From positions 868,001 through 932,000 of the forward strand of contig CDROCS010000152.1 of NCBI GenBank assembly GCA_977020255.1: a stretch of 64,000 nucleotides of DNA. The letters run 5' to 3'. Below the pieces are notes generated by a model. That model did not search any database. It saw only the letters and a list, made by a program, of their open reading frames with translations, and was not told the origin of the DNA. The position numbers and the translations under genes are program-made. The stretch comes from Obrimoposthia wandeli. Lineage: Eukaryota. This document shows, piece after piece, positions 5,581-62,700 of the stretch. The stretch's first letter is position 1; every line of letters starts with the position of its first letter.

Positions 5581-8500
5581 CTGTAAGGGGTCCATTGAAT
5601 GTTGAAATTCAAACCTCAAATTCCAAATACCACAAATATCGACGTATCGGGAGGATTCTACATTTATATACCTACATCATAATATCGTTCGGTTCAGATT
5701 GTCCGAGAAAGTGGTTTTCCGATTTTTCTGTAACCATTCGAAGCGTCAGATTTGGAACAAATAAAAGCGATTATGTGTATATCTGTCCATTCTTTGATGG
5801 TAGAGTGGTACAGTATAATATAATGTAAATGAACATGATTATCCACAAAGAAATATTGCTCAAAACATGCGATAATTATGCATCAGTCATCTAGTCGGGT
5901 AAAAATTTAAAGAAAAATCGAACGGAACAATTTTTTTATAATATTTCACTAGAAACTTAATATTCTGACTGGGTGCTAAATTTATGCAGTAAAATTAAAA
6001 TGAATTAAAATTTGGCAAAAAAATATTTTATACAGTTTTTTTTTGCGTTTTCCTTATTTTAACTTAATTTAAATTTTATACTGTTATGTAACGTAATTTT
6101 GCCAAATAGTGCAAAATCATTTTGTTATTTCGTTTCTGCGTTACGTTACTAATAACTTTTAAATCACTTCTAAATAGTATTTCTAAAATAAAAATTCAAA
6201 TTTTATTGCTTCTTTACAATATACAAAAATATCAATTAATGTTTATATTTATACAATAAAATTATTTTAAATTTATAAAACTTTGTTATAATTTTTATCA
6301 GTTTATCTACATTGAGTTAAAAGTTAATGTACAAACTATATATTAATTAATTAAATTATTTGAAAAAACTTTATTTCAATTTATATAATTAGGATAATGA
6401 TTAAGTTTAATAATTTTTCTTATAATAATATGAATTAAATTATAAAATAGTTCATTATAAAATAAATATCAGAAATAATTATTAAAATTTAGCTTACACT
6501 GCTTATTTTTATAAATTATAGTTAAGATTATATTACGTAGAAAACAAATTATAATAAATTAATTAATAAAACGTAATCATATGTTTATATATAAACTACA
6601 GTTTATGTATTTACAACAATAATATTTATTTGAATTCTTATTAAACTCTATTTGTAATTTTAAAAGGTTCGAACAAATTAATAAAAATAAAAGTAGTACA
6701 TTAATATCTTTTCATTTAATGCAAATAATAAAAATTATACAGAAGTTCTTATTACTGTTATTAAGATAATTTTATTGAATGAATATATTATACAGAAGTT
6801 CTTATTACTGTTATTAAGATAATTTTATTGAATGAATATATTTAATTGACCATTTCGAGTCAAAAATATTCCCTGTTAGTTAAAAAACACGGATAAACTG
6901 ATAAATTCGTTTAGTAATATTTAATAGTATTATAGGTTCTACCGTAAAAAAACTGTGGTTTGGAATTCTTTGGAAAATTTCTTATAATTTGTTAACTAAT
7001 TTCATATGAAATATTCAGTAATCAATTATATTTTCTAAGTTATACACAATACAGTGTACAAAAGACGATTTTTATGATTGCATCCCTTAGTCGTTTCAAA
7101 AGACTGTTTATGCTTGAGACAAGTTCAGTTTTTATGAAAAAAATTCAAGAAAGAAGAAAGAGAAAGTTCTGAAATGAAAGAAGGTAGCCGATAGAGGAAA
7201 GTGAAAAGCACAATGACAATGTTGATCTGGTTAAAGCTCTGATTGACTAAAATATTGCCCAACCCAACACAATGCAGATTTTAATAACTGAATAGCAAAT
7301 GGTACTACACAAAATGGGTCACACGCCAACTTTCTGACATAGAGGAGGTTCGAAGGGTCGATAGATGTGAGAACCTGCTCGAAGCATTATCACCGAGACT
7401 TTGTCGTTTTAATCTAATCGCAATTGTTGAGAAATGATACTTGATAGGACATTTTGAGCCAAGAAATACGATTGGTTGTTGGTTGACACCCGGTGGCGAC
7501 AATGCCAATTCTTCAGCTTGAGAAGATAATGCAAGACCCAATCAGCCGAGAACTACCTTGGCGTGTCTACAAGAAAAGAACATCTACCTCATTAAACATC
7601 CAACTTATTCTCCAGACTGAAATTTAAGTGGTCGGTATTTCTTTCGAAGACTTGAACCGAAATAAAAGGCCTTTAATAGTGTCAAAGAAGACATTGGTGA
7701 GTAATTGTATACTGACAAAAGAAGGATATCAGATTTGAAAGATTGGCAAAAAGAAGCGTTGTTTATTTTTGAAAAATAAATAAATTCTTGAAACCATTTT
7801 ATGGTACCGTTGGTAAAATATGCATAATATGGGGTTAGTTATATTTTTAATAATACATTTTAATATTTATCAATTTATAACTGTTTTTATTAGATACATA
7901 ATGGTTTTTTTAATCATGTCTGGCATTAAAATCCTACATATTCGCCGTACAGGGAAAATAAAATGCAAAGCAAATGTGCACACGTTCCTAAAATTGATGT
8001 AAGTCTAAATTATCACAAAGATCATTCAATTTGGTATAGATTCTTCTGGTCAGATTTTTTAATCAGAATTGGCTGGCCAATCTAGGACATTTGTTACCAG
8101 TAGAATCAAACCAACCTTTACTATATAAGGCTATGTCAGCTGGTGCATTGTCTCGTAGAAATAAGTTTGTGAAACCTTTGACAAAAATTAGCAAATACCT
8201 GAGCCCAGTGTTTTGATTTCAATTGTTTTTTCTGTTTGTATATCGTGAATATAGTTTTGAATCCATAGAGGCCATCAATATTAAACCGTTTCTCTTCAAA
8301 AATACCATAGTGTTTAACTTATCGACATTCATATTTTTTTCATTGAGTAAATCATCGGTTGTCATAACAGGAGTATACTTGAAATCCGGGCAATTTTAAT
8401 AAAATTAAAAAAGATTTTGTAATACAAATTTCATTGCTAAATACAAGGCAAATATATTATAACAAACAAAATAAAGTAATCCAGTTAATGTAGAAGACTT

Positions 8501-20500: not shown

Positions 20501-23500
20501 ATATTGAAATACAATTTACAATAAAAGTACATAATTGTTATATTTGATAATAAGATTTTAATGGATAAATTATTTCCAATTAATTCATTAGTAAACATTT
20601 CCGTCTTCAGTAATAACAGCAACAATAATGATCAGTAAAAATTTTGTTTTAAACAGTAAATGCAATAACAATGATCATATATATGATCAGCAATAATTTC
20701 TGCTTTCTGTAATAACAATAATAATTATGGTCAGCAATAATTCTTCTTTTTTGTAACAATTTAATAATTCGTCTTAGAAATTATATCAAATCCCTATATG
20801 TTAAACAAATTTATATGAATATTTCTGTCGCACGAACACACACACGCAAATCGGCACTACTACACAGATCGAAGCAGTAAAATAACAGGTGTGTATGTGG
20901 TGCACTTAAAATTGGGCAGGCAGAAAAATCGATAGAGGATGCTAGAATTCTTTCTGTGTTATCTCCTATTTAGCAGACAATTTTCGCAGACAAAGAAGTA
21001 TTAAAAAAAAAAATTAAAAACAGCCCATCAATATCTTAAAAAATCGTTGTTCGACTGAGGGCACTTCGATAAATTAATTTAAACTATATATTTCAATTCC
21101 CAACATAATTATTCATATTACATTTGAGCAAAATGATACATTTCAAACTGCACAAATAATCACAAATATAAGTATGTTGTAAATGACGGGGTGGTGCGCA
21201 GTTATGAGTATTATAGGTTAGTGTTTGCTATAATCGTCATGTCATTCATGACTCAGTTAGTCTTGTGTAACAATGCAGACGTTAAGAAGGAGTACATATG
21301 AACTGAAGAAGATGCAGTGTGAAATACGATTTAATTGAATTGTGGATTAGATCACAAATTATTAACAGTTTTTTTATTTCTTTTTGATGTAAATGATTCG
21401 GTTTTTAGTTTTTGGTTAATTCTAATTAAAACTAAAATTGGTGTTTTTCTCATTATTTTTATTTTTGTCAAAAAAAATTACATAATTTATTTATTTCTGA
21501 TCATTTTTGATTTATAATTAAAAAAATATCTAACTCAGGAATAATTTTAAGGTTGGATTTTCATAAATCATACTGAAATAAAGCTGCCATATTAGAGTTA
21601 AATTTAAACGAACATTAAAAAATAGCAAATATTAAAATTACTATCCTTTAAAAATGTTAAGCAAATAAATAACAATAGTTTAAGTTTTGAATAAAGTTTA
21701 TACCAAAATACTTATTAAAATGTTATGTAGTGACCCACAATAGAGAATAATAGTTTTAAAATATTAATTAATTTTGTGTAAAAGTCACCTTTTTACGAAT
21801 AAATTTTTAAAGAAAGACCTTAGATCAAAATCTAAACTACACATAAATTAATAATGAAATATCGATTTATTTCATGTATGTTCGAAAGTTTTTCAACTTT
21901 CGTATTAAGAAAGATCCACAAAAATGTGAATTTTGTTTATTAAAACGTTAATTAATTAAACTTTAAAGATGAATTACTAGACATCTAAAAGTCTCAAATA
22001 AATGAACATAACATCCTTTTAAATCATAAAGTATTTATATTTGAAAAATGTACGGTTCATCAAAATCCCACCTTTGGGTAAAAAGTTCTATAATATAAGA
22101 AAGTACATAAAACTTTACAATACTAACAAGCAAACACACCTACTAACGGATTACCCGATGGAACCTAAGTGGGCAAATTATCTAAATTATCAAACCCCAT
22201 TTAGATTAATTCAAAAGCCCCGACAGGAAGACCCGGGCTCTACATGAATATTTTGGGAATATAAAAACCCTGTTTTTGGGAGATAGACAATAAAATTTTA
22301 CTGGACATCGTGACTGGCCTCCTACAAAAAATTCGACAGGTCATTATTTTTTATCTTTTTATTTTTGTTATTTTTATTCTTAAATATGTTAACGTTTTAA
22401 AAAATATTGAAATTTTGATTTGAGAACTATTTTATGGCAATACAATAATTTGGAATCTACTTGGATTATAGCAGATACCAAATGTTTTTCTATTGATGGA
22501 ATTATCTCACACATTTGGAAATATTTGCAAAATGGCAGTTACTGAACGGTTTCAATGGAAGAGTCCAACTGATTATGTAGCACAATTATTGCTTGTGTCA
22601 TGTGCTTCCGGTGTTGTAGGGGAAGCTATTATTGTTGGTGGAGTGATTCACATTTATGATAAAGATAAATCAAAAGTAGATCGAGAATTTATATATGAGA
22701 AGAATAAATAATCGATAATAATGTGTTTGGTTTGGCATGGGTTCAGCTACAGCCATATCTGTAAAACTCGCACATGTGTGTGTATGTCTGTATGCAAGAA
22801 GTAATGCGTGCCCAATCGATTGTTGTCCCATTTCATTTCAAAGTTATTTCAATGGAAAACGACGATTCATGATTGATTTAATGATCCCAACCCCCCTGTA
22901 ATTATACCCCAGTTCAAGTGGTGTCACCAGATTTGCAGAAATATAGTTGGTTTTTAGAAAGTGAATTGTTCAAATTAAAATTTAAAAAACACTGGCACTA
23001 TGAGCTCAACATCAGTAGAAACCTGGAAGAACAATGCGGAATTACATATCAGAAATTTAAGCGAAGCTGAACTGGAGATTGTTCAAGTTATTCAACGAGA
23101 TTTTGAGCTGAAAGCAGCAAAAAAAGTACGGATTCGTCGTCATAAACGTTAATCAAAGGATGCGGACGAACAAATAACGGTTTTAGCAACTTATGATTTC
23201 AACAAGAGTTTCTGTGTTATCTGTTTTAGACGGTTTTGGCCTTTGATTATTCCTAAACGATAATGTTATTCTTGCCAGCATTACATGTGCCGTAAAGGAA
23301 GTTGCTTTAAAAAAACAGAGTTTACATTTGTATGCTTTGTCAGAAAGAAAGGTTAGTTCTAAATAAACAATTTAATATAAACAAAAATAAATAATTGAAT
23401 AATGAATAAAACACATACAACACAATATAAACAGATTTCAATATTGATTTTTTTTGTCTTCAAAATTGTTCTAACCATAAATTCACTGTATTAAATAAAT

Positions 23501-26500
23501 ATTATTTAATACACGTTTTGGAATGTGATGTACTATCACTATTCGGACGCGCATAGACGGTGCCATAACGTTGTTTTTTCTTAATATTATTGTAAATTGA
23601 TTGTTTATATTGAAATTAAGAATTATATAATATAAAAAATGTTCATATATTACTAAATGTTATTGAAAAGTACTGAAACCTGAAAAAGGAAGCTAATATT
23701 ACAAATAAATATTTTCGCAATTATTGCTCTAGTAGTAATCGCTTCTTCTTGCGGTATCCAAACAAAAATAAAATTAGGAATATATGCTTTATTTTAACCC
23801 CTATTTATGGCAGTTCAGAAGTACTAATAAGTTTGAAATATACGCATTACCAAGAATATTTGATATTATCATAAAAGTACAACCGAACGTTGGTACATGT
23901 TGCAAACTTATAACATGTGAAAACTAAAAAAAATTCTTATACAATAGTGAATAATTCATCAAAAGATGTGTTTGTCTGTGAATTTATGTTACCATACGAA
24001 AAGTATCAACAAAAAAATTCGGGTAAAAATACAACACATTTCATTTTATATATTCATGATTCGTGATATGAATATATTTTTGTTTCTAACAAAGAATTTA
24101 TTTGAAATTTAAAATACATCTTTAACTACCTAATACAAAAAAAAAATTTTTGCTAAAATTTAGACAAATTTTGTTTATTTATAATTTTACTATTTTGATG
24201 CTCGTAGATTAACATGAATATGATATATTTTTAATTATTTTATGAAATTAAATGGATATTAACTGCTTAGTAAAGTAAGGAACACACAGTTTCTTTAAAA
24301 TAAACTTTTTAATTAAAAGGAGTATTATAAATGCTTTCTAAGATTCTTAAATTAAATGGAGGATCAGTTGTTGAAGCTTTAGAATTGTTTACTGATAAAT
24401 ATGACTTAGAGGGTCATTCTTGTTGGAGTTCCTAATTATTGAATAAAAATAAGGAATTAAAAGCTGAGATACATATAAGGTTTATTGCGGCTGGAGCAGA
24501 TGTTATTACAACACTCAGTTAGCAGGCAGACTCTAAAAACTTGTCCAAAAAACTTTAATATATCAATATCGGAAGCTAATGAACTGATGGCGGAGTTTGT
24601 GATCATCTGTCCGAATATTTGAAGAAATGAAATAGAATCAAGCAATTATTCCGTCACATATTCTATCAAAACTCAACGCAATTTCCTTCATCTACTACAA
24701 CATCTTCATTAATTGATGTGAAATCTACCTCCAAAGTCGAACTGAAAATCACGTTAATCGTAACTCTACTTCTCTGTGTTTGCTGAATAATATTAACTAT
24801 TTTTAAATTTCGAACAATGACACTTATAACTTTTGCACGAAAACGGCTACGACGAAAACCGCGACAAACAATTAACACTGATCCAGAGAACCTACGAAAA
24901 ATGATTAACAGTCTACCCAAACTGATATCGGATGATCATCGACAAATCAACTTCAAAGAAAAGGTTGTAACTCTTCCTACTATTCATGAACTTGATATTA
25001 ACATTTAATTTTTGTTTCCTCTTAGGAGAGCCAATTTTTTTTATTGTTAGTTTCTGACAGCTGTATGCAACCTCTTTATTTTTTTTTAGTTCTTAATCTG
25101 CTTGATTCTTTATATTGATAACGTATATTTGAATTCAAAACTGACATCATTCCCCTGACATTTTGGGAGATAGACACAATAAAATTTTACTAGACATCGT
25201 GACTGGCCTCCTACAAAAAATTCGACAGGTCATTATTTTTATTCTTAAAAATGTTAACGTTTTTAAAAATATTGAAACTCTCTAAATTGTTGGCCGCCTG
25301 GTCATTTTTTGTATTTAATAAAGTTATATACAAATTATATTTTCTTTTTATATTTAAATTAAGCCCAACATTAGTAAATGAATTTAAGCCCATATGCATT
25401 GGCTACTGATTAACTATTTCTAATCTACGACGCATTGAAACGTTTCTTATTAAGCCGCTATTAAATTTTAAACTTGAGATGAATATGAATTAGACATAAT
25501 AGATTCAAAATACAATATACATTCGAATAAACAATTTTACAAGAATTTAGTATTTTTATAATGATAAAGTTAAGCTGTTCATTTTGTAAAATTCAACACG
25601 GAATGTAACTTCAAAAACTCTTGAAATAAAATAAAAATATTGTACATATTTATGAATCAGCCTATTTTTACGAAAGTATGTTCAAAAACATTTAACTTTG
25701 AATACACTACTCTTCAAAGTTCGTTCTTGTTCAGACAGTTCTCTTTACTTCATTGGTTTCAAACTAAAGCTTTCTTTAGCCTATACTTCGATTTGTGTTT
25801 TTTGTTTGAAAATGCACTGTAGAGCAGTCAAAATGTTGAGGTTAAATATACAACGTAGGATCCTTTACTGGTGGTTCCCAACTGTGAGTTCTATTGGTAG
25901 TAACCTACCCCTTTAATTGTACTTATTTGAATGTTTTTTGAACTTATTTATAAAGTACTTTCAGTACAAATTGATTTATTAGGCAAAATACATAACACAA
26001 TATAATCAATACAAGAAATGTGTATCAAAACTTGTGGAATAAAATGTCATCAAAAAATTTAATGAACAAACTTCTAATTTATTTCCTTAGAATATTTCAA
26101 TAAAAATTATGTCAAACATTTTACAATCACTTAGATCCTAATATGGCTCTCGGTATGTTAGCCTAGTAGTTATTAACTCAACTAATGCAAATTTTACACC
26201 ATTATTGCGTTACTTGACATTGAACGTAAAATATGACGAGCTCGCATAGCGAAGCCGATTAGTCCAAACAAGAGCCATTCTAAAATGTTCTAAAATTTGT
26301 ACGCGTTGTATAGAGAATTTTATTGATACTATTTAAAAACGTCAGTAATAAATATGCGACCAACATAATGAAATGCATAGGGAAATAATATGCATTTGAT
26401 AATAATCGATTTCATTTCAAATCGGATTTTTACTGCCTTTTTACTCATGAATTCGACAATTGATGTAACTGAATGAATTCAGAATATCATTTTCAGTTGT

Positions 26501-29500
26501 GTACTGGACAAACCCCACAAGGTCATAATATCGTCCCTATCAACCCATAATGATCACTACAATGACCATTAATTTAATTGCCTTCATTAATTTACCTTCA
26601 GACATAAATTAAATTCGTAACTAACTCTAGCTTTGTTACTGCAAACTTAGCAACATATCATAACCACACAAACAAAAGCTTTACTGAAGATTGTAGTTTA
26701 TCTGTACCCTTTTACGGTGTTTGAAATCCTCAATACTACGGTTTGTGAACTCGAAATTAGGGCATGAAACAAACCGATTAGCTACGACTATTGTGTTTTT
26801 TTTATGTTTACCTCTTCTAGTTTCTTCGACAAGGATTCATTTGTTCACAAATGTCAGATGCCAGAAAGTGTTCATTAATTATTCAAGACCTGGCTGAACT
26901 CACAATGCACGAAATACATGATACATTTAAAACAAAGGAAGCCGTCACTGTACGCCAGACACACAAAACAGACCTTCTTCCCTGAATATAGTTTATTTAC
27001 ATGTTCCCAGGAGGACGTGATAGACAAAAAACTAATCAGTATAAAGTTCAAAATTAAGATACAAAGATTTCATTTTTGTTATTCAAAGGTACTTTACAAA
27101 TCAGCATTTTTGAGTAGTTAACTTAAGCATTGAAGCTGAAACAAGGACATCTGAATTTTTACACACTTTCTAACTTCTAAAGGTAAACTATTGTGAAGCA
27201 TTTATGCAAACACCTAAAAACACGGTCTTCTTTCTTCGATTAAGATTTTTCAATTGTCACTCTTCTATTATCGCCATTTTTCAAACTATTTGATCTTGGT
27301 ATATTGATAAATTCGAGAAATACTTACTCAATAATTTACTATATCAAAATGTATATTTTCAGCAAGACAACCCTCCTCCATATGTATTTAGGAAAAGTCG
27401 TTATTGATTTTTGTAGAGAATACCGAAAAATATTTTTATAAAATCCTAATGGTGCCATAAACACACTATACACGTCTAAATGTTTATTTGTATATTTGTA
27501 TTTTAAATTAATTTTATAAGAACTTGTCATATGGTCATTTCTTTTTGTAAATTGTTTATTTTTTAAAATATTAAATGTTTAGTTCACTGTTTTGAAAAGT
27601 TTAATGATGCAAATTAATCAATTCAGTATATTTTTAAAAGTAGAAAATTAAAGGGATATTTAATGTAATGAAATTATGCATTTTGCTTAATTTTGTGATC
27701 TTTTTCTAGAATGAGAAAGAGTAGCAATTATAAGATATTTTAACACAGTTATTTGGCGTATTTCATATTTATAGATTAGTTAATATAACTTCATGATTTA
27801 CTATGCAAATATTTTAATAGATATCCGATACACCTATTGTAACTTAGTAAGTTACAATAAGCCAATTAGTAAGTTAAAATCACTTAAACGTGATTGTCAC
27901 AGATTGTTACAAATTGTAATTTCAAATGATTTAAGTGATTTTAACTTATTTTTATTTAAACTTATTTAACAGTTTAATGTTATTTTATACATTTTAACTG
28001 TTTTAAACTTTAAATTTTACAGTTAAACGTGATTTAATTATATAATGATTTAACTGTTTTTTAGATATAAATTTTAAAAATGAAGTAAAAATAAATAGAA
28101 ATGCTATATTTATAATACATAGTTATAAAATGGATTCTTTCTTCATGCATCGCGGAAAGAATTTTTTTATGACTGTAATGAGAAGAAACATCTTGGTTTG
28201 AGGAATCAATCAGTACGCCAGCGATGCTTTCGCGGATTTTAAATATTTTTTCCTCCGATGAAGCTTGCAGCATACCAGCAGTCCGTGTAAGTTTCTTCCT
28301 CACATCACTTTTCACTTTAGAAAAAACCGTTTCAATAGGGTTTAAAAAGGGACTATAAGGGGGTAAATTTACAATTTTGTGGAGCGATGAGGTAGTGAGT
28401 GTCCGATTGTGGATACTGGCATTGTATTTGAAATATATTCGATATATTTGAAAGGTTTTCATACATTTTTAATATACCTAATCTAACTTAGTAAGTTCTT
28501 TTTAACTTACTAAGTTTCTAACAAATTGTGCCTCTCGGTGGGTTTTGATTGGATTGTTATTATTTTCAAATCCACGTATGTATGTGATATTTTATTTTTA
28601 CCTGTATTTTAATCTAATAACCTATTTTTAATTTAGTAACTTGGCCAAAATCTCAGTTTTACCCAATCAGTGACAGGCTATGTGATTCTATTCAAATATC
28701 AAATGCAGGTATTAATTTAGTAACTTATCTAATTTAATTTACTAATTTACAATAGGTGTACAACTTAATTATAGCTAGCTGAATTTAAATAAATACACTG
28801 CTTATCTAGTAAATTTATCAATTTATGTACATATTCCATACATTGCATGACGCTAACATTGTTTATGAAATTTCATATAACTTTTAAAAATTTTATAAAC
28901 CAGTTTACAGTTACTCTTTTACGAATAATTGAAATACGTTCTACTTAAGTCTATAAGTATTTGAAACCTTTACGAAATGTTTCTTGGAGTACTAAATAAT
29001 TGAGTAATCAAATAGAGAAATCACTCATTAAGAATGGCAATATTCTTGATCATTACTGTATATATTTTTAAAATTATATATTTTTGAAAAGATTCCAAGC
29101 TGCATATTATATATCTCAGGCATTCCCCGATAGATGGCTTCTAAAGACAGTAGCCATTTTGATACGTAGAACAGTCGTCTATGTACATAGTAAAAAGTCA
29201 TATTCTTGAATATTCTTCACCATGATTGCTGTCAGTATGATTAATAAAATCTGAAAGAAGTCTGAATTTGTCTTGGCAGATGAGGTTTACCAGAAAAAAG
29301 GAGAGTAATAAATCGTCTTAAAAATAATCTTAATCCTTATGAACCACATAGTATACAAACTCATCATATGCTTGCTCATATCATCAGTCATCTTACGAGT
29401 TTAATAGGATAATATTTGGTTTGATTGTGACTTTTCATTAGAGTGGAAATATTTTAGTTAAGATATGGAATGTGTCCATTTTTGACAGATTATAAATGTA

Positions 29501-44500: not shown

Positions 44501-47500
44501 AAAGCATCTTCCTGGGCTAAACCAGCAGAGAAGGAAGCTTGACTATGATGATAAATCTGTTAACCTAATATCATTGACATGACATTATTTGAATTTTCTG
44601 TCCCATGCTCGAGATGAGTATCCCCCAGTGTCCATAAGGGATTTGTGTATCTTACTCTTGACCTGAGAGAAGACCATTTCAAATGAATTGAGAAAGGAAT
44701 GTATATAGGAAGATACTTGATTTCGTAAATGTTGGAATTGTAAGGATTCAATTGCAGATACGTGCATCATCATGTACCAATGTACAATACCTGTCAATGA
44801 ATTTCACTAGGTTCTCTCCGACAAACTCATTTTGGTTCTGTCGAGATTGAACCATTTCTGTTGTAACAATTTAAATATATGTGGTTTGATGTACCTGTAA
44901 ATGATATTCTTCAACGTGAGCATGCTTCTCACGCCCAATTGCTCTGTGAGTTTTATTTAATCTTCTTCGATTTCATATGAATTTATAATAACTTTTTTGA
45001 AATCACTGCTCATTATTAGAAGTACAATATTAATAAAATTAATAATATATTACTGTAAACACCTGTTCATATTTTTGACATAGGAATAGTCCTGCCGGAC
45101 TCTGACGATAATACGTCTTCTAATATGATTCTTCTTGCATCTTGAAAAATATGTAAAATTACAATTCAACTTTTCCTATGTTTTGCGAATTAAAGGTTTT
45201 TATTGGTTATGTTCTGTGTCTCCTATTCATTCAGGTATCAATTGCACCCAACAAGCTATATCTATCTTACGATCTAAAACCTAATTTATTTTACTATTGT
45301 AACCGTTTGAATTTCAGATTGTAATACACTCCAAAGCGCTTCAAACATAATTTTAAGTTCCATTGGTTAAAAAGTCCACATTTATTGTTAAAAAATGCGG
45401 TATTGTTTGGCATTTGACTTATAAACGACGGAAAGTTTTTTGTTGTAGAATTGACGCTTTACTGCAACATACTTAATAAACTAAAACTTACGATTTTTGA
45501 ATTTGTACAAAAGTAGGACGAATATTGAAACTGCCGAAATGATAAAAAATCCCAACAAGGAAAATCCGAAAAGTCTATGCGACGAAAGGTATTCATACAT
45601 CAAAGACCAAGTCGAGGTGGAATCATTTGTTACTCTGATCAATAGGGGAACTTTTGTAGTCAATGCATTAATTCCACAGTCTTTGATGTCAACTTCGAGG
45701 GAGTAATTGCCGATGTCGTAAAAGTTCAATTCTCGTTTCAACTGTAGCCAGCCGGAATGGGAATTAACCAAAAACATATCTGCAGCAGAATTGAGAACAG
45801 AAAACCGCACGGTTGCATTGACACCATTGTCGTAGTCGATGGCTTTTATGTGCAGAATATTTTGCAGCCTCGAATACTGATTGTAGTTGAAACTCAGATT
45901 GAGACGATGTTCGTATAGAGGTAGCAGACATACTGGATAATTGTCATTGACGTCAAGAATCAATATCGATAATTTGACGATTATAACTAGAGGTTCTCTG
46001 CCACAGTCTGAAACTACGATTTCGATTTGGTATTTGTCTTGTTTCTCTCGATCAAACGAGGTCAGAGCAACCAATTGTTTGTCGAAGAGCGAAAAATCAC
46101 GATAACTGAAACGCAGCTTTGCCTTGGTTTGTCCGGAATTTCCGCTGTCCGCGTCTGTGATGTTGAGAATATCGATGACGGAGCCAATGAGATTGTTCTC
46201 GATGATATGGAGAGTTCGCGGACCATTGTAGAGAGGATAGTTGTCGTTAGTGTCTATGATATTGAAGCTGACAGTCAGACTAGCAGTGTGTGACGGGGTT
46301 CCGCAGTCTTTTGCAGCAATTACCACAAGACACTGGGGACCTTTCTCGTAATCAAGCGGATGCAGCAGGAACAGTTTGCCAGAGAGCAAGTGAATTGTGA
46401 AGACGGGCTGACTGGAGGAGACAATGGCATACTCCACTTTGCCGTTTAGTCCGCTGTCTCGATCTGTAGCTGAGAAGCTGTAGAGCGCGCTGCTGTAATT
46501 GGGCACAGAAGATTCGTTGATAGAAAAATGGAGTGGAGCTGCCTCGAAAATGGGACTGTTATCGTTCTCGTCTAGGATCTGTACCTGGATTGCCAGTGTA
46601 GATGAGAGCGCCAGAGGATTGGAGGCGGTGTCGTCAGTGCAGGTCAGTGTGAGGTTGTAGTGAGACAGTGTCTCACGGTCGAAGGAGGTCAACGCTATGA
46701 GCTTGTAGGTGAGCTTGTCACTGATGTACTTGCTGGACTCCTGCATCCTGAAGTGATCTCTGAAACTCCTGTAACCCTGCAGTTGACAGGACACATTGCT
46801 GTGTTCGTCTACATCGTGGACATTGTAGGTGGCTATGGTTTGAGGGTGTCTAGAGTTCTCTGGCAGATCTGGCAGCTCAGGTCCGGTGATGCTAGGACCA
46901 TTATCGTTGAGGTCAGTGACTGTGACGGGGATTTGGACGGAGCTAGATCGCTTGTTGTTGCCGGCGTCAGTGACTACCACTGTCAACTGGTGTAGGGAGA
47001 TGTGCTCGCGATCTGCTGGGCTGGTGAGCAGAAGATCGCCAGTGCCGGAATGGATGGAAAAGATACGGGAGGAGGGACTCGTGAGCAGGGAGAATGACAG
47101 CTGGCTGTTGAGACCATCGTCACAGTCGGCAGCGACGACGGTAGTGAGGTAGAGGGGTACATTTGTGTTCTCGGGAATGGTGATTGGACGGGACGCGTTG
47201 ACATGAATGATTGGAGTGCAATCGTTGACGTCCAGCACCTGGATGGAAAGAGGATTACTGAAAACTTAGAAAGGCGAGAATAAATGGATAATCAACGAAA
47301 AACATTTACTTATTTCAGTAAACGTGATACCACACAAGTTAAACCGCATCAGTTTAAACCATTTTATTTAATAATGAAACTTTAAATGAAATTCATACTT
47401 CACAATTGTACTACACAATGTCCCAACCACCAACTCACCCGCATCACAAAACTTCAATAACTTGCACTAACACATTTCACAACTGATTATTTATAGCCAA

Positions 47501-50500
47501 GAAAACATCGATGATGTTTTTAATCACGATCAACAATGATAAATTTATCAATAAACAAATACGTGTACAAAAACTAGAAACTGATCCATTTAAATGAACT
47601 AAAAATTAATCATTATAATATCGAAATTTTAAAATACAATATTAGAACTCTTCTACCAGCCCAATGCATTTTGTCTTCATGTATATTTACAGTTTATTCT
47701 TGAAATAATAAACATCGATTTATCGAAACCCCACTTAACAAAATAATTTCTGTCATTTGAATTTCGTTATATCGATTTTCTGCATATTGATTTTTTTAAT
47801 ATATATACCTCTTCTTTATAGATACAACATATCTTTCAACAGAAAATGTAAAGTTCACTTGCATTAAAATGATTAATGTAATTACATACTTGAGGTATTT
47901 ATCAATGAAGTGTATTATAAATCATGTGAATTTCTTGGATGATATAAGTTAAAAATCACCTTAATGTTTAAGATAATCACCTGTATGGAAACAGTTAGTG
48001 TGCTGGTGAGGGCCTTGAGCTCTGCACAGTCTTCGGCGAACACGATTAATGAGTGGATGACTTGTCGTTCTCGGTCGAGAGGCTGCAGGAGCGTCAGGAT
48101 GATGGTCTTGTTGGCACTGGCTTCATCGGTGCAGCCGTCCGGAGGTAACCGTGTCAGCTTGAAAAAGGGACTGTGACTATGGCTGTACTTTATCCAGGCA
48201 TTCTGGCGCCAGTCAGCGTCGTCGGCAGCCAGCGGGAGCACGAGCCGGGTTCCCACCGCAGCGTCTTCCGGCAGACGAATCGGTGTCCGGAGTCGGTCGG
48301 GAAATCGGGGAGCATTGTCGTTGAGGTCATTGACGATGATCTTCAGAACGTAAACCAGGTTGAAGTCTTGTACTGGGTTCAACGCCAACACGGTGTAGAA
48401 GAAGCACTGGAATGGTGCCATCAGTTGGCAGTGGCACGACTTGATACTGGCATGGGGAACCAGCTGTGGATGACAGAGACGGTCCCGGTCGAATTGTGAG
48501 GTCAAGGTCAGGTACTGGTGCATTATGGAATGCTGCTGAATCTTCATAAATCGTGAGGCCAGCTGATTAGAGGGTAAAAATGAGAGCAGTCCCGATTGAG
48601 GAGGGACCGCATTGTTTGGATCTGTTGGGTTTATAAACCAGTAATTTTATTATAACACATCGCAACATAAAATTATCCGTAAATGCAAATAAACGTCTAG
48701 GGATAGTTTGTATCCTGATTAAGACAATTAAAAAAAAATTATATCTGTAAAAACATTTTTATACGTTTTTATAATCACTATGCATATAAACTATTTAAAG
48801 ATTCATTGAAATCCAGTTTGAAACTCGTTCTTTTGTATAACGGGAACGTTTTGTTTTCCATTCCTATCGTCCATGCTGAAGGTTTTACTGATTTCAAAGT
48901 TATAGAGCTTCTTCTAAGGATATAGAATGAATAAACGTAATAAAGTTGTTATTTATATGAGTGAGACAGAGGAGAAAGAAATACGCCCATTAAATTTGTG
49001 TTTATATCTCAAAATTCTGATGAGATAGAATATTTTCGCAATAAGCTAAATCATTTAGACTAGCAATAGACAATTTCGTTAAAGGAGAAAATAAAAAAAG
49101 ATTATTTGTTAAACTGAAATTCATACAAATTGGTCTCCTATATATTATAAATTATATAAAAATATAAATTAATATGATTTGTCAAATTGTAACTTATAGA
49201 ATTATTGGAAAGTTTGGGCATCTTCAGTCAAAAATGTATTTTTATTTGAAATGATGATTATTTCAATTATTAAATAGTAATCATAATGATTAAAGAAATG
49301 AAACCTTTCTTTACAGAAATCATTTTGATAAAAAGAACTCGTTATGATACAATTTTAATTTTTTTTAATAGTTAAAATACAGAATATATCGTGTGTAGAT
49401 CAAATCAACAGCTTAAGGGATTAAATAATATATTTTACTCTTTTTTCAGTTTTTACTTCTTTCTTCAACTTTATCACTTATGATTTACTTTTTATTCACA
49501 ACAATATTTATCCAACAAAATAATTTTAAGAATACAACTGTCAACATAAATCATCAAAACCATCGTGTATCATTTTTCAATTGTCATAGAACAGTTTCAT
49601 GCAGTGTACATAAATTTAACCAATGTGGAAAACTGTTACACATTTGCTTAGTTTATTTCTTCTTTATCAATAGATCTATAAAGAAGATGAACATTATTAC
49701 TTTGGCCCGGCCAAAATTCCATGCAAACTCAAATACAGTATATACTCTGTTTCATCCCAAGTTTCATAATAAACCCCCAGATAGACTCCAGATTTAAACT
49801 TATGCTTAACCCTGTCAAATACAAATATTTAACTGATTTAAACATGAGTTTATACGGTGTTTTTGTAGGGTCATTAACTCATTTAATATTGAACCCTTCA
49901 TATGACGTAACCTTGGTATTGGGACCTCTTTATTTTGTGATTTTATTTTCGTAGAGCCAAAGAGACTTAATCTTTAAGAGAAATGTGACTAACTGGTGTC
50001 GTTTATTTTTTTCTTTAAATCTGAAACTTTCTGATGTATTTATCAAACATTCGAAAAAATATTAAAGAATATTAAACTATATTTTATCATTATTAATGGT
50101 AAAATAAATTCAGATATTTTGAGAAAAAATTAATTTAACAAAACATGTATAAATAAGAAAATAAAATAATTACATTTTTGCATATATTCATAAATCTTTC
50201 ATTAAACATCACAGAATTGTACGACAAATAAAATTATAAAATGTAAGAAAAAATAATTTCATCATATACTTCTGTGTCACACCAGCTGCCTCTCCAGTTA
50301 ATTTTATATAATGTAAATTTTGACACCTTTTAAAATGATCAAACCAACCTTTGTTTGGCTGAAAAGATTCACCATTTGATGATTCACCTTCGTATTGTGC
50401 TAAGCTTTTATAGAAATATAATGTCTTCATGGTAAAAATGTTAGAAGACTGAGCTATACTTTTCTGGTTTTGATCTTCAATCCAAATAGATAGTAGTTTT

Positions 50501-55135: not shown

Positions 55136-56366
55136 TCCTAGCCTACCATAGAAACAATATAGATACAATCCTTAATTTTTTCATATAACTACATAATTAT
55201 ATATAGGTAAAAACTATATACTTTATTTTAATGTGTTACTTTTGTTTATATTTTTAGTGGCCCATTTTCAGATTTATGATAAATCAAGTGGAATACAGGA
55301 GTGTTATCAAGTTCTTTTGTTTTGCAAGGACTAAACGCAACTGAAATAAATAATGATTCTCCATGTTATGCTACTGTGAAAACGTGGGTCAAGTATTTTA
55401 AAAATGGTCTCACTTCTGTGTTTGATGATGAAAGAACGGGAAGACCTCAAGAGATTCCAGATCAAGTTAAGGAAAAATTAATTAAGATCGTGAATGATGA
55501 ACGCAGAATCTCTTTCAAAATGCTGTCCATTCGTCTTAATACCAGTGTGGGAAGCCTTCACACAATGGGGAAAGATGTGGGTATTCGAAACCTGTGTTCT
55601 AGATTTGTGCCCAAGTTTTTGACTGGCGAAATGATGAATCGTCGATTGGAGTGCTGTGTAGAAAATTTGCAACTTTGTGAACAGTGGGGTGACCGTTTCC
55701 TAAGTAGTATTGTAACAACTGATTACACAAAGCTTTCTATGTACTCGCCCGAATCTCGTCGTGAATCCAAGGAATGGAAGTTTCCAAATGAGAAGCCGTC
55801 AAACAAAATGAGATCGGGAACCATTCATCGAAAAGAAACAATGCTGACAATGTTTTGGGACACAAAGGGTGTTATAAAACTAGATTTCACTGAGAAAGAC
55901 AGCACTATCAATGCAGCATACTACAGTAATCTTGTAACAACTACTAGACAGAACAGACTCAAATCACGAAACACACCTTTATGGCTATTGCAGGATAATG
56001 CGCCAGTGCACACTGCAAACCTCGCAGGACAGACAATTCTGGAGATGGCTTTTCTCTACTGAATCATCTACCCTATAGCCCAGACCTCGCACCTAATGAC
56101 TTCTACATGTTCCGGCATCTTAAGAAGCATTTGACAGCATAGATGATTTGATCAACAATGTTCGTGATTTTTTCAATAAATGTAAGCCTGGTTTCTTTGA
56201 AAAAGCTTTTCGGGAGCTAATCATACGCTGGAAAAAATTTGTTGACAAAAATGGATCATATGTCGATAAAGAGACTATATATAGTTACATGTTGTTGTAA
56301 AATAAAAATATATTTGGTTACTTTCTTTTTTCTACGGTAGGCTAGGGACTTATTGAATGTACCACG
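55136..56366 (+). mobile_element. Mariner element, near full length, frameshifted
   Basis: 253-aa ORF 55301-56062 (FDDERTGRP, RFVPKFL, IVTTD, WLLQDNAPVH) continuing after a frameshift into HLPYSPDLAPNDFYMF. Right TIR ..ggtaggctagggacttattgaatgtaccacg|TA; partial left TIR cctagcctaccatagaaa. Confidence 0.92.
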
Positions 56367-59719: not shown

Positions 59720-62700
59720 CCTTCCCCCTTTGATCTAACTAGATCAACCTTAACCTAGCCTACCCCGATACAGTTTAAGATCATGCCGGATCATGCGTCA
59801 CCTTCTTTTGTTAGTTGCTTCGGCCACGCTGTCTCTGAGCCTAATAAGAACTCGGGACCTTCCCACCATAATTTATTTTGACTCAGTCGATGAACCTCGG
59901 CTCCTCAACAATATATCCGCTGGGTTTAACTTTGTGGGTACATGTCTCCACTGAGCTATGCTGTTTCCTCCTGTATAGGTCCAACGCGATTAGCAACAAA
60001 TGCATTATAATACCGCCCTGGCTGGCGTATCCACCACGGTACGTTCAGACTGTCGGACCAAAACTTTACTTATTTTAACTTTAAGTCTAACGCACTCGTG
60101 AGTACCTTTGCCAATTTAACACCGACATCCTCAACTAATAACTCTAGACGCGGTATACTTTTTACTTTTACAGGCACCATTTTTGTTTTTGACGCTATGA
60201 AACATACAAATATTTTTTCCGCTTCTTCATTTCTCAAGTAACCTACTGTTCCATACGCCTTCTAAGAAGCGTCTACAAATATATGTATCGAACATTTACT
60301 AGCTACTCCAGCCCATATCCATCTGGGGACTTTAACCTTATTCAGTAACTTTACGTCTTCTACCCAATGGATTATCTCTTCTTTAATGCTCGCTTCCACT
60401 TTCTCATCCCATTACCCTCCTGAAAGCCTTAGCTCCTGCATAATAATCTTTGCCCTTATTACTATCGGACTAGCAAACCCTAATGGGTCAAATACTTTTG
60501 ACAGAAGACTTAGAAATTTCCTCTTTGTAATGGTCGTTAACATCTCTAAATTCGTCGTCATTTCAAAAACGTCCGCCTGCGCGTTCCATGCTACTCCCAA
60601 CGTCTTGATACTTTGCACCGTTTTGCCATCCGCAATATGTAAGACCTTCGCTTGATCTGCTGTGGCGATTTGTTGATTAACTCGGTGGTTGCTACTTAGC
60701 CACATTTTGGCACTCATTCCTGCACCGCCCCACACTTGCAGTAGGTCTCGTTGTAATTGTATCGCCTCCTTGACTGACGGTATTGAATCCAAACTGTCAT
60801 CCATGTATGTGGACTTTAATATCGTCTCGATAGCCCTATCACATACTCCCACGAACGTTTCAGTGTTTATTCGAGTCATTAACTGTGCTAATAATGATGA
60901 CACATTGATCCCAAAAACTACCCGATTAAATTCGTATGTGTCTACTTGTTCGCGGTCTTTCCATAGAAATATCAGCCACGTTTTATCTTTATCTGCCACC
61001 TTTATCTGTAGATACATCTCCGATATATCACAAACTAATGCTACAGCATTTTTCTGAATCTTAATAAGATCGTGACTAAATCTCCTTGCAGCTTCGGCCC
61101 ACAATGAATTAAATCATTCAAACTTGGGCCTCGCACCTCCACCGCTGCATCAAACACTATTTGCACCTTTATCGTATCCTTTTCTCGCTTGACGATCGGA
61201 AAGCGTGGTAACAACCACTTTGTCATTTTTACTTCTTCTTCTGGAACCTTCCTGATATAACCTTTCTGGATAATGGCTCTCGATGACGCCCTGTACTCAG
61301 ATCTCAACCGCGTGTCCTTGTCTAATCTTCTCTCCAAACACTTCTGCCGTTGGTTCGCCATTTCACCATCCCATCTAACATTAACGTTCTCATTTTTCCA
61401 CCGGAGGCTGACTTCATACCTTCCTTCTACTTCTTTTGTTCCGAGTCGTTTTTCTTTTAATACCTTTTCGTTGTTATAACTTAACTTGCTTTGGAGATTT
61501 GGTACGGCTTCTACTTCCCAGAATTTTCCTATATTAAATTCCTCTGTTTCGATCTGGGTTCCAAAATAGGTGTGGGCCAAATTCGTGTGTTGTCTACCTC
61601 TATTAGCTTCTCGTACCTGACCAATACAAGTCCATCCCAACAGTGTCAATCTTGCTATCAGTGCACCTGATCCTCCTCTCACTTCTCTAAGGGCACTCTG
61701 CAATTCGAGGTTGTCCGCACCCAGTAATAATTCAACTTTTCTCTTTACATTTACCGCTATAAATTTTATACCCTCCATATGCCTCCACATTTTTTGCTTC
61801 TACTGACAAATTTATTACCTCTAAGTCCCCGGTAATCTCTGGTACTGTTAATGCGTTGATTAGCTTCACATATCTTTGATCCGTGCTCCCTAATTCTATG
61901 TTAACTTCAGCACAGTCCATCGTTTCCACGATTCCTCCTATAACCCCCACCCGAATATTTTGTTTTTATCCTGACACTTTTAGCGTTCGTGATAAATCCT
62001 TATTAATATATGAGCGTATGCTGGCATCATCTAACAAGGCGTTGACCATCAATTCTTGGCCTCGATGCCGTATCATAACCGGTACGGTTCTTAATGCCAA
62101 TAATGTAGTTTCCTCTCTTGTCCCTCTTGTGAAGTAGGATTGTGGGCACGTCTGATTACTACGCTCTTCATCCACATACTATATCCAATGGTGTTTTTCG
62201 TTGCAATTCCTCATTTTACACAACTTATCCACCTTGCATTGTTTTACGTAATGATTATTTCGCAGACAATTTCTACATAAACTTTCCTTTTCAACCCACT
62301 GGCGTCTCTCTGATACGGATAATCTCTGTAATTCTTCACATTTGTCTGTGTAATGCACCTTCTTACACCTTAGACACTTTATCTTTCTCCCCCTCATTTA
62401 AAATTGTCCATAAATCATTCTATCCTTTGGCTTTACCGCTCCTACGAAGGGTTTTTGCTCTTTCACTATTTTTATATTTTGGTGCTTATTTGCTGCAACT
62501 CGCTATTTCCTCGGCTATTCGCCAACTTTCTTTCGGCCTTTTGTTGTATCCATTCTTCTAAAGATCTTTTACTCTTTCGTTTATCTTCTGCTTCTAACTA
62601 TTCTGACCATGCTACTTTTCCTAACATTGGTACTTTCTGTAGCAATTTTTCACATAGAAAACCACCCCCTAATCCCTCCTCTTTTTCTAGTGCTCGTGCT

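What the first reader, a model, noticed from the sequence alone, without database searches (positions are those of the whole stretch)
22274..25277. Direct-repeat-bounded cassette carrying pieces of several unrelated host genes inside a protocadherin intron
Seen: two near-identical 117-139 bp direct repeats enclose about 2.75 kb. Inside, on one strand, are the ATG-bearing start of a MyRIP/melanophilin-like gene (with its splice donor), the ATG-bearing start of a homocysteine S-methyltransferase, and the TM/C-terminus of a third gene, plus unassigned coding-like snippets (22430-22990, 23620-24050). Known: Helitrons and Pack-type DNA transposons capture co-oriented genomic gene fragments. Inferred: a gene-capturing mobile element, possibly an undescribed family because its ends are direct rather than inverted repeats and I found no convincing Helitron hairpin/CTRR.
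Basis: partly seen in the sequence, partly recalled or inferred. Interest (0 to 1): 0.8.

Follow-up and report, generated by a model that had tools for sequence, protein, structure and literature searches.

The report
Decayed LTR retrotransposon carrying host-gene fragments
The "cassette" is one broken, immobile copy of an old Ty3/Gypsy-derived LTR retrotransposon family that long ago picked up the front ends of two host-like genes; it is a known kind of event, not a new class of gene-capturing transposon.

Summary
The direct repeats are real, and so are two of the three gene fragments. The repeats, however, are not the ends of a new element. They are the overlap between a 3'-truncated 5' LTR (21590-22428) and a 5'-truncated 3' LTR (25153-25370) of a ~930-bp LTR, TGTT...AACA. 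This LTR has at least 627 first-look candidate sites in the genome, and 17 of 23 solo copies have perfect 4-bp TSDs. An intact relative on C1097 reads LTR, conserved PBS-like motif, interior, conserved purine-rich tract, LTR, inside a CCAT/CCAT TSD.

Every part of the interior is multi-copy. The Rab-binding-domain (FYVE_2, melanophilin/rabphilin-like) start and the homocysteine S-methyltransferase start are family-wide cargo. They evolve neutrally and have no DNA-level parent gene in the genome. The "third gene" (TM plus tail) is the C-terminus of the element's own env-like ORF, found at 208 or more candidate loci. Just upstream, related copies keep an integrase C-terminus whose nearest relatives are Ty3/Gypsy polyproteins.

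Both junctions of the window copy are unique to this locus. They remove the PBS and the PPT, and there is no TSD, so this copy cannot move. Helitron and Pack-type readings are rejected. The scan earlier noted another LTR-mediated capture in this genome (s1-232356). I rate this a new member of a known kind, of low to moderate interest.

The parts
21590..22428 (+). 5' LTR, lacking its last ~95 bp; its first dinucleotide is TA instead of the family's TG
   Evidence: 86-93% identical over ~840 bp to about 25 dispersed copies. The family LTR is ~930 bp, TGTTAGAG...GCCCAACA, and 17 of 23 solo copies have perfect 4-bp TSDs.
22268..22428 (+). Left 'direct repeat' of the finding: LTR positions ~680-840
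   Evidence: It is 93-96% identical to the same segment of other LTR copies.
22423..22431 (+). 5' deletion junction. About 240 bp are missing: the LTR tail, the PBS-like motif and the leader. The join lies at a short GAAnT(A) microhomology.
   Evidence: Base-level comparison with C1097 and C1717. Among the scored hits (40 of 92 candidates), only this locus spans the junction.
22532..22711 (+). ORF1-like segment. It is an intact 96-aa ORF in C1097 and has one stop here. No detectable relatives.
   Evidence: About 26 copies genome-wide.
23000..23353 (+). Captured host-like gene start: Rab-binding domain (FYVE_2, melanophilin/MyRIP/rabphilin type), with two in-frame TAA stops. It ends at a GTTAGT donor-like site.
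   Evidence: (52.6 bits here; 73.6 bits and an open 133-138-aa ORF in C1097 and C2314).
23582..23701 (+). 112-120-bp unit that is tandemly amplified in other copies
   Evidence: C1067, C288.
23690..24047 (+). Start of the element's own env-like ORF3 region. In related copies it follows the integrase C-terminus directly and begins with a signal-peptide-like hydrophobic stretch.
   Evidence: At least 197 candidate loci.
24048..24603 (+). HMT-bearing insert that replaces the middle of the env-like ORF. The homocysteine S-methyltransferase N-terminus runs from the ATG at 24331 to about 24600, with three stops in the frame as translated here.
   Evidence: open 82-aa ORF in at least 7 other copies, Pfam positions ~3-77; HMT-subfamily copies match the env-like ORF only from residue ~89-100 onward.
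24604..25152 (+). C-terminal part of the env-like ORF (S/T-rich stretch, TM segment, cytoplasmic tail ending at 25008) plus 3' untranslated interior.
   Evidence: At least 147 candidate DNA loci and at least 208 candidate protein-level loci with open frames up to ~400 aa.
25150..25158 (+). 3' deletion junction. About 730 bp are missing: the PPT region and the first ~680 bp of the 3' LTR.
   Evidence: Among the scored hits (40 of 83 candidates), only this locus spans the junction.
25153..25370 (+). 3' LTR remnant (the last ~250 LTR positions, with internal 24-bp and 14-bp deletions), ending ...AAGCCCAACA. It contains the right 'direct repeat'.

Best explanation
Window 21590-25370 is a dead, internally deleted copy of a non-autonomous LTR retrotransposon family derived from a Ty3/Gypsy-type, env-carrying retroelement. 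Shown: the family has ~930-bp LTRs (TG...CA), 4-bp target-site duplications, a conserved PBS-like motif and a conserved polypurine-like tract. Shown: its interior keeps only the integrase C-terminus (in some subfamilies) and the two ends of an env-like ORF. Inferred: during the family's history, reverse transcription incorporated host transcripts into the interior, most likely by template switching onto co-packaged host RNAs. One was the 5' part of a Rab-effector (FYVE_2) gene, sitting where gag-pol should be. The other was the 5' part of a homocysteine S-methyltransferase gene, sitting inside the env-like ORF. Shown: the cargo-bearing forms were then copied to a few dozen sites, presumably in trans by another element's proteins, and have decayed neutrally since. 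Shown: at this locus two deletions removed both LTR/interior junctions, the PBS side and the PPT side. Inferred: since this copy has no PBS, no PPT, no TSD and no shared junctions, it can no longer move.
For: LTR identity: the left repeat is the tail of an ~840-bp element present at many loci. Boundaries are sharp, TGTTAGAG...GCCCAACA, and 17 of 23 solo copies have perfect 4-bp TSDs. There are at least 627 first-look candidate sites. Full element: C1097 has LTR-interior-LTR inside a CCAT/CCAT TSD. The PBS-like TTGGTGCCTCCAGAGAG sits 3-4 nt after the LTR in 7-9 copies, and GGCGGGGTGAGATA abuts the 3' LTR in 14 copies. Family-wide interior. Retroelement ancestry: the integrase C-terminus (GPY/F-type) lies directly upstream of block 23690-24047 at 107 or more candidate loci. 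Its best relatives are polyproteins with RVP, RVT_1, RT_RNaseH, Integrase_H2C2 and rve, and none has Peptidase_A17. Env-like ORF. Cargo. Cargo is modular among copies: FYVE-only in C3863 and C5515, HMT-only in C265 and C2871, both in the window, C1097, C2314, C1002 and C3150. Neutral decay: dN/dS 0.68-0.94 in the true frames against 0.46-1.11 in shifted-frame controls. Locus-specific junctions.
Against: No autonomous copy with this LTR was found. All ~75 scored loci with this integrase C-terminus have open frames of 343 aa or less. The RT/IN next to the C3229 copy belongs to an unrelated family. The tRNA that would match the PBS-like motif was not identified. No parent gene was found for either cargo fragment: HMT genes reach only 36-42% amino-acid identity, and the paralogue on C574 reaches 37.5% for FYVE_2, so the capture mechanism is inferred. 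The FYVE_2 fragment ends at a donor-like GT at a conserved exon boundary, which fits a fully spliced mRNA source poorly. The window copy has no TSD (GCCA versus TTAG), so its two LTR remnants may come from two different insertions joined by recombination. Public reads did not bridge the junctions.
Confidence: 0.88

Rival explanations
1. One reading: a Helitron or Pack-type (TIR) DNA transposon, or an undescribed class with short direct terminal repeats, that captured genomic gene fragments.
For: Co-oriented fragments of unrelated genes. One fragment keeps a donor-like GT at an exon boundary, as genomic-DNA capture would. The interior is mosaic among copies.
Against: The termini are TG...CA with 4-bp TSDs, not 5'-TC/3'-CTRR inserted at AT without a TSD. 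There are no TIRs at the cassette ends. The repeats extend to 930-bp LTRs with PBS-like and PPT-like motifs and an integrase remnant. The short-repeat junctions occur only at this locus.
Confidence: 0.02
2. The local structure is a recombinant of two separate family insertions, for example ectopic recombination or gene conversion between two elements, or a solo or partial LTR next to a 5'-truncated element. It would then not be a single element that suffered two deletions.
For: The outer flanks do not form a TSD: GCCA versus TTAG. The two LTR remnants are no more similar to each other (~4-9% substitutions) than to unrelated copies. A second LTR-end-like motif lies 15 bp past the 3' end.
Against: LTR and interior are co-linear and co-oriented exactly as in intact copies. 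Both breakpoints are simple deletions relative to C1097, and the 5' one has microhomology. The family identity of every part is unchanged either way.
Confidence: 0.3
3. E is a Ginger-type or other cut-and-paste DNA transposon (TGT...ACA termini, 4-bp TSD), and the cassette is DNA trapped between two independent insertions.
For: E has TGTT...AACA ends, a weak ~20-bp terminal inverted similarity and a 4-bp TSD, as Ginger1 elements do (this comparison is from my own knowledge and was not tested).
Against: E flanks the same interior in direct orientation at many independent loci, with one TSD around the whole unit. Conserved PBS-like and PPT-like motifs sit at the inner LTR edges. A retroelement integrase C-terminus and an env-like ORF lie inside.
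Confidence: 0.02
4. An assembly artefact: repeat-induced mis-joins created the truncated LTR/interior junctions.
For: The junctions are unique in the genome. The family is high-copy. No listed public contig bridges them.
Against: The junction sequences are clean. The 5' one shows microhomology typical of real deletions. The flanking sequence is contiguous in a large contig. The Logan unitigs are simply too short to test this.
Confidence: 0.05

Closest known systems
Bs1 of maize and other gene-transducing LTR retrotransposons of plants (maize, rice, sorghum)
   Same: A non-autonomous LTR retroelement whose interior carries sense-oriented fragments of more than one unrelated host gene, amplified as part of the element. 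Bs1 carries three (PMC13317346). In maize, 425 intact LTR elements carry gene fragments from at least 189 captures (PMC2774510).
   Different: The host is an animal. The parent genes are no longer recognisable at DNA level. There is no evidence of a fused, expressed or selected chimeric ORF: dN/dS is neutral. In the maize survey no single element carried fragments of more than one gene, so double cargo is uncommon but not new.
Envelope-carrying Ty3/Gypsy elements (errantivirus-like) of invertebrates
   Same: Pol relatives are Ty3/Gypsy type. An ORF with a signal-peptide-like start, an S/T-rich and N-glycosylation-rich middle, and a TM plus tail lies between the integrase and the PPT. Such elements are widespread in metazoans (PMC13524379).
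   Different: Only remnants survive here. The env-like ORF matched no Pfam family, so its kinship to glycoprotein F-type or B-type envelopes is untested. No intact gag-pol-env copy was found.
LARD/TRIM-type non-autonomous LTR derivatives
   Same: LTRs, PBS-like and PPT-like motifs and a TSD, but no gag-pol. Mobilisation must be in trans. Solo LTRs are abundant.
   Different: The interior is not anonymous: it holds retroelement remnants plus host-gene fragments. The size (3.8-6.5 kb) is LARD-like rather than TRIM-like.
Helitrons and Pack-MULE/Pack-CACTA elements
   Same: They amplify co-oriented fragments of unrelated genes.
   Different: All structural hallmarks differ: termini, TSD, repeat orientation and enzymology. 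See the membership test.

Membership tests
LTR retrotransposon (class I, LTR order) | Long direct terminal repeats ending 5'-TG...CA-3' | tested here: met
   The ~930-bp LTR reads TGTTAGAG...GCCCAACA in 23 aligned copies. It flanks the interior directly in C1097 and others. In the window copy both LTRs are truncated.
LTR retrotransposon (class I, LTR order) | Short target-site duplication around solo LTRs and around complete elements | tested here: met
   17 of 23 solo LTRs have perfect 4-bp TSDs. The complete C1097 element has CCAT/CCAT. The window copy itself does not: GCCA versus TTAG.
LTR retrotransposon (class I, LTR order) | Primer-binding site next to the 5' LTR | tested here: inconclusive
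   A conserved TGG-initiated motif, TGGTGCCTCCAGAGAG, starts 4 nt after the LTR in 7-9 copies. No matching tRNA was identified, and the window has no tRNA genes. The motif is deleted in the window copy.
LTR retrotransposon (class I, LTR order) | Polypurine tract abutting the 3' LTR | tested here: met
   GGCGGGGTGAGATA lies directly before TGTTAGAG in 14 copies. It is deleted in the window copy.
Ty3/Gypsy (Metaviridae-like) lineage | Pol with PR-RT-RH-IN order and Gypsy-type domains | tested here: inconclusive
   Only the integrase C-terminus survives in this family. Its best relatives are polyproteins with RVP/gag-asp protease, RVT_1, RT_RNaseH, Integrase_H2C2 and rve, and none has Peptidase_A17. 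No RT of the family itself was recovered.
Gene-transducing LTR element (Bs1-like) | Host-gene-derived sequence inside the element, shared by family members | tested here: met
   FYVE_2 reaches up to 73.6 bits in 13 element copies. S-methyl_trans scores above the curated cut-off in 13 or more copies. Atlas look-alikes are melanophilin and rabphilin.
Gene-transducing LTR element (Bs1-like) | Identifiable parent genes showing the direction and mode of capture (spliced or unspliced) | tested here: not met
   There is no DNA-level parent: all 26 candidates for block A are element copies or the short C1056 match. HMT genes reach 36-42% amino-acid identity. The FYVE_2 paralogue on C574 reaches 37.5%.
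Helitron | 5'-TC and 3'-CTRR termini, a 3' subterminal hairpin, insertion at AT without a TSD, and Rep/Hel in autonomous copies | tested here: not met
   Termini are TG/CA with 4-bp TSDs of varied sequence. The associated protein remnants are an integrase and an env-like ORF, not Rep/Hel.
Pack-type TIR DNA transposon (Pack-MULE, Pack-CACTA, hAT) | Terminal inverted repeats bounding the cargo, with a superfamily-specific TSD | tested here: not met
   The cassette ends have no inverted repeats; only weak AT-rich pairs of 71-78% were found. The bounding repeats are direct and are LTRs.

The most novel reading that the evidence does not exclude
The captured Rab-binding domain ORF was once used by the retroelement itself, for example to hook its particles or its env-like protein onto Rab27/Rab3-type vesicle traffic. 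It is still an uninterrupted 133-138-aa ORF in C1097 and C2314, and it gives the best FYVE_2 matches in the whole genome. A related reading: both cargo pieces are 5' ends of genes because reverse transcriptase ran off the capped ends of co-packaged host mRNAs, which would make the family a natural record of forced copy-choice at mRNA 5' ends in an invertebrate.
Probability: 0.06. Interest if true: 0.55.

Novelty: new member of a known kind. Interest (0 to 1): 0.25.

Why it matters
It removes a false lead: there is no new transposon class with short direct-repeat ends here. It documents an animal LTR-retrotransposon family carrying two independent host-gene fragments. That situation is well described in plants (Bs1; maize, rice and sorghum surveys) but less often in invertebrates. 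For annotation, the FYVE_2 and HMT starts here, and at a few dozen other loci, should be masked as TE cargo and not called as genes or pseudogenes of host loci.

Tried and rejected
1. The RT/IN upstream of the C3229 copy looked like the autonomous partner. Rejected: that stretch is a different family (7743 candidates) whose copies all end at L082:6334, and no E-type 5' LTR lies in the 16 kb upstream.

2. I searched for intact pol at loci with the family's integrase C-terminus. All ~75 scored loci have open frames of 343 aa or less.

3. I looked for HMT parent genes among the fetched multi-exon and intronless HMT loci. There is no DNA similarity and only 36-42% protein identity. Several of these loci look bacterial.

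4. C574 as the FYVE_2 parent: only 37.5% identity, so it is a paralogue at best.

5. The search for homologous proteins found nothing for the FYVE_2 ORF or for ORF1.

6. Read support for the junctions: the public runs are short unitigs from one sample and none bridges the junctions, so this is inconclusive.

7. Selection on the cargo ORFs: dN/dS cannot be told apart from the frame-shifted controls.

8. Rfam scan for ribozymes or other RNAs in 21300-25600: no match at E up to 0.1.

Full report
OBSERVATION. The two direct repeats exist at 22273-22412 and 25162-25277. A 48-nt core is identical in both and is expected 0 times by chance. They enclose about 2.75 kb carrying coding-like pieces on the + strand.

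THE REPEAT IS PART OF AN LTR. The 152-bp repeat has at least 627 first-look candidate sites in the window's 1.35-Gb assembly, and all 40 scored sites are 90-96% identical. Mapping 29 of those loci back onto the window shows that the left repeat is only the last ~155 bp of an ~840-bp shared element, 21590-22428 at 86-93% identity. The right repeat aligns to the same tail plus about 95 further bp, up to 25370.

An alignment of 23 copies with flanks gives sharp ends, 5'-TGTTAGAGTTAAATTT...TTAAATTAAGCCCAACA-3', and a length of about 930 bp. Perfect 4-bp target-site duplications of varied sequence flank 17 of the 23 copies. These are solo LTRs.

THE CANONICAL ELEMENT. In many loci the window's interior (22424-25152) lies between two complete copies of this LTR in direct orientation. 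The best-preserved example is C1097 (L063):
- 5' LTR at 1030-1892.
- The motif TGGTGCCTCCAGAGAG, starting 4 nt after that LTR.
- A ~150-bp leader.
- The interior.
- A purine-rich GGCGGGGTGAGATA directly abutting the 3' LTR.
- 3' LTR at 6635-7553.
- The whole unit inside a CCAT/CCAT duplication.

The PBS-like motif is conserved in 7-9 copies and the PPT-like tract in 14 copies. The two LTRs of the C1097 copy differ by 7.2% substitutions, so the family is old. LTR-interior-LTR-interior tandem arrays occur on C3863 and C5515.

THE INTERIOR IS FAMILY-WIDE AND MODULAR. Block 22416-23400 has 26 candidate loci, 23400-24300 has at least 197, and 24300-25160 has at least 147. Sub-blocks 23690-24047 and 24604-25152 are the abundant core.

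In copies on C3229 and C265, a typical integrase C-terminal region lies directly upstream of block 23690-24047. It reads FQTGDKILIH...GPYEIIKVIE...VHVNICKPYY and is open for about 95 aa in C265. It is present at 107 or more candidate loci. Its nearest relatives among 1.84 billion representative proteins are long polyproteins with RVP/gag-asp protease, RVT_1, RT_RNaseH, Integrase_H2C2 and rve. None has the BEL/Pao protease, and one carries a viral fusion glycoprotein. The ancestry is therefore Ty3/Gypsy-like, which fits the 4-bp TSD.

Downstream of the integrase end, the reading frame opens with a hydrophobic, signal-peptide-like stretch. In C3229 it continues through an S/T-rich segment with N-x-S/T sites into a TM segment and a short tail that stops just before the PPT region. 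That 170-aa C-terminal portion is found at 208 or more candidate loci, mostly over its full length, with open frames up to about 400 aa. The HMT-bearing copies (window, C1097, C2871, C2741, C2314, C3150, C240, C1002, C265 and others) match it only from residue ~89-100 onward.

Env-carrying Ty3/Gypsy elements are widespread in invertebrates (PMC13524379). The env assignment here rests on position and on sequence features only, because no Pfam family matched.

THE CARGO. The segment 23000-23353 translates in one frame, with two TAA stops, to a Rab-binding domain. FYVE_2 scores 52.6 bits here, and 73.6 bits in C1097 and 72.9 bits in C2314, where the ORF is uninterrupted at 133-138 aa. Language-model look-alikes are melanophilin and rabphilin-3A.

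The element copies are the best FYVE_2 matches in the entire genome. The only non-element hit, C574, is 37.5% identical. Its exon ends at GTGAGT at exactly the position where the cargo's coding similarity ends at GTTAGT.

The segment from 24331 to about 24600 is the N-terminus of a homocysteine S-methyltransferase domain (Pfam positions ~3-77). It is an open 82-aa ORF in at least seven other copies. None of the genome's HMT genes that I could fetch is a DNA-level parent, and they reach only 36-42% amino-acid identity. A 96-aa ORF1 (window 22532-22711, broken here) has no detectable relatives.

Cargo content differs among copies. C3863 and C5515 have FYVE only. C265 and C2871 have HMT only, and C265 still has the integrase remnant. 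The window, C1097, C2314, C1002 and C3150 have both. So the two acquisitions were separate events.

Pairwise dN/dS across 8-14 copies is 0.93 for ORF1, 0.68 for FYVE, 0.94 for HMT and 0.92 for the tail. The shifted-frame controls range from 0.46 to 1.11, so there is no sign of purifying selection.

THE WINDOW COPY. Relative to C1097 and C1717, the window lacks two stretches.
- About 240 bp between LTR position ~840 and the end of the leader. This removes the last ~95 bp of the LTR, the PBS-like motif and the leader. The join lies at a short GAAnT(A) microhomology.
- About 730 bp between the end of the interior and LTR position ~680. This removes the PPT region and most of the 3' LTR.

Searches with 76-nt and 83-nt probes across each junction find only this locus spanning them. 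Every other scored hit matches one side only. The outer flanks, GCCA and TTAG, are not a duplication. The two LTR remnants are no closer to each other than to unrelated copies.

Two histories remain possible: one element suffered two deletions, or two insertions recombined. I give the second about 0.3. Either way, the short-direct-repeat form never transposed and cannot do so now.

MECHANISM. The following are shown: the LTR-retrotransposon architecture, family-wide cargo, Gypsy-type integrase ancestry, neutral decay and locus-specific deletions. The following are inferred:
- The cargo entered by reverse-transcriptase template switching onto co-packaged host transcripts, or by read-through transduction. 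These are the mechanisms described for Bs1 and other plant elements (PMC13317346).
- Cargo-bearing copies were mobilised in trans.

Both cargo pieces start at the gene's 5' end, which would fit reverse transcriptase running to the end of a host RNA and then being forced to switch back. The donor-like GT at the end of the FYVE_2 piece argues for an unspliced or intron-terminated transcript as the source. Without parent genes this cannot be settled.

No autonomous master was found. All ~75 scored loci with the family's integrase C-terminus have open frames of 343 aa or less. The next tier, at 40-45% identity, is a different family with open frames up to 3380 aa. The RT/IN next to the C3229 copy belongs to an unrelated family with 7743 candidates.

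REJECTED READINGS. A Helitron is excluded by the TG/CA termini and the 4-bp TSDs. A Pack-type TIR element is excluded because the cassette has no TIRs. A Ginger-like DNA transposon is excluded by the direct orientation of the repeats, the PBS-like and PPT-like motifs and the single TSD around the whole unit. An assembly artefact cannot be excluded with the available short unitigs, but the clean, microhomology-bearing junction makes it unlikely.

CONTEXT. The nearest cadherin-domain exons are at 45484-48547 on the minus strand. Between them and around them lie other TE remnants: DDE_3, a mariner-like transposase and a BEL/Pao element. 'Inside a protocadherin intron' is plausible but unverified.

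NOVELTY. Gene-fragment capture by LTR retrotransposons is established. Bs1 carries three host genes. In maize, 425 LTR elements carry fragments from at least 189 captures, although none there carried more than one gene (PMC2774510, PMC13317346). Incorporation of host genes into TE consensus sequences has also been surveyed (PMC3597677). This finding is therefore a new member of a known kind. It is mildly interesting as an animal example with two cargos and an env-like remnant, but the window copy itself is ordinary dead TE sequence.

Noticed in passing
L082:1-6334 (C3229:20600-26933): An unrelated, extremely abundant LTR-type family (7743 first-look candidates) with RVT_1 and rve. Downstream of the integrase it has a 175-aa ORF with an RNase_T exonuclease domain (L082:5561-6085), which lies within the stretch shared by most long copies. 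This may be a family-wide extra ORF or another capture.
   Followed up: partly
window 23582-23701; C1067:453893-454611; C288:1771198-1771406: A 112-120-bp unit that is single-copy in the window element is tandemly amplified (up to five or more units, 97-98% identical) in other copies of the family.
   Followed up: no
C6637:25409-27062: Three tandem copies, with a 663-bp period, of the block holding the family's integrase C-terminus.
   Followed up: no
window 21682-21963: In the Logan unitigs, the summed word depth over this part of the LTR is roughly 20-30 times that of LTR segment 22246-22386. This LTR part may be shared with a much more abundant repeat, or the LTR may be chimeric.
   Followed up: no
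window 25381-25394: Ten bases past the 3' LTR end, AATTTAAGCCCATA repeats the LTR-end motif AAATTAAGCCCAACA. It may be the remnant of an older LTR end at the target site.
   Followed up: no
window 28064-28462(-), 55301-56059(+), 60415-61104(-), 45484-48547(-): The wider window holds a DDE_3 transposase fragment, a mariner-like Transposase_1 ORF, a BEL/Pao remnant (Peptidase_A17 plus RVT_1), and cadherin-domain exons (5 cadherin repeats in a 585-aa ORF).
   Followed up: partly
G000 contigs C253, C2749, C2834, C506 and others: The assembly contains intronless 1150-1238-aa MetH-type and ~337-aa HMT ORFs, some on megabase-scale contigs. These look bacterial (symbiont or contaminant contigs) and can mislead searches for parent genes.
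   Followed up: no
C1056:267485-267920: The only non-family-like match to the ORF1 region (window 22429-22783), at 74-79% identity. It may be a diverged copy or the parent of that segment. It could not be fetched.
   Followed up: no
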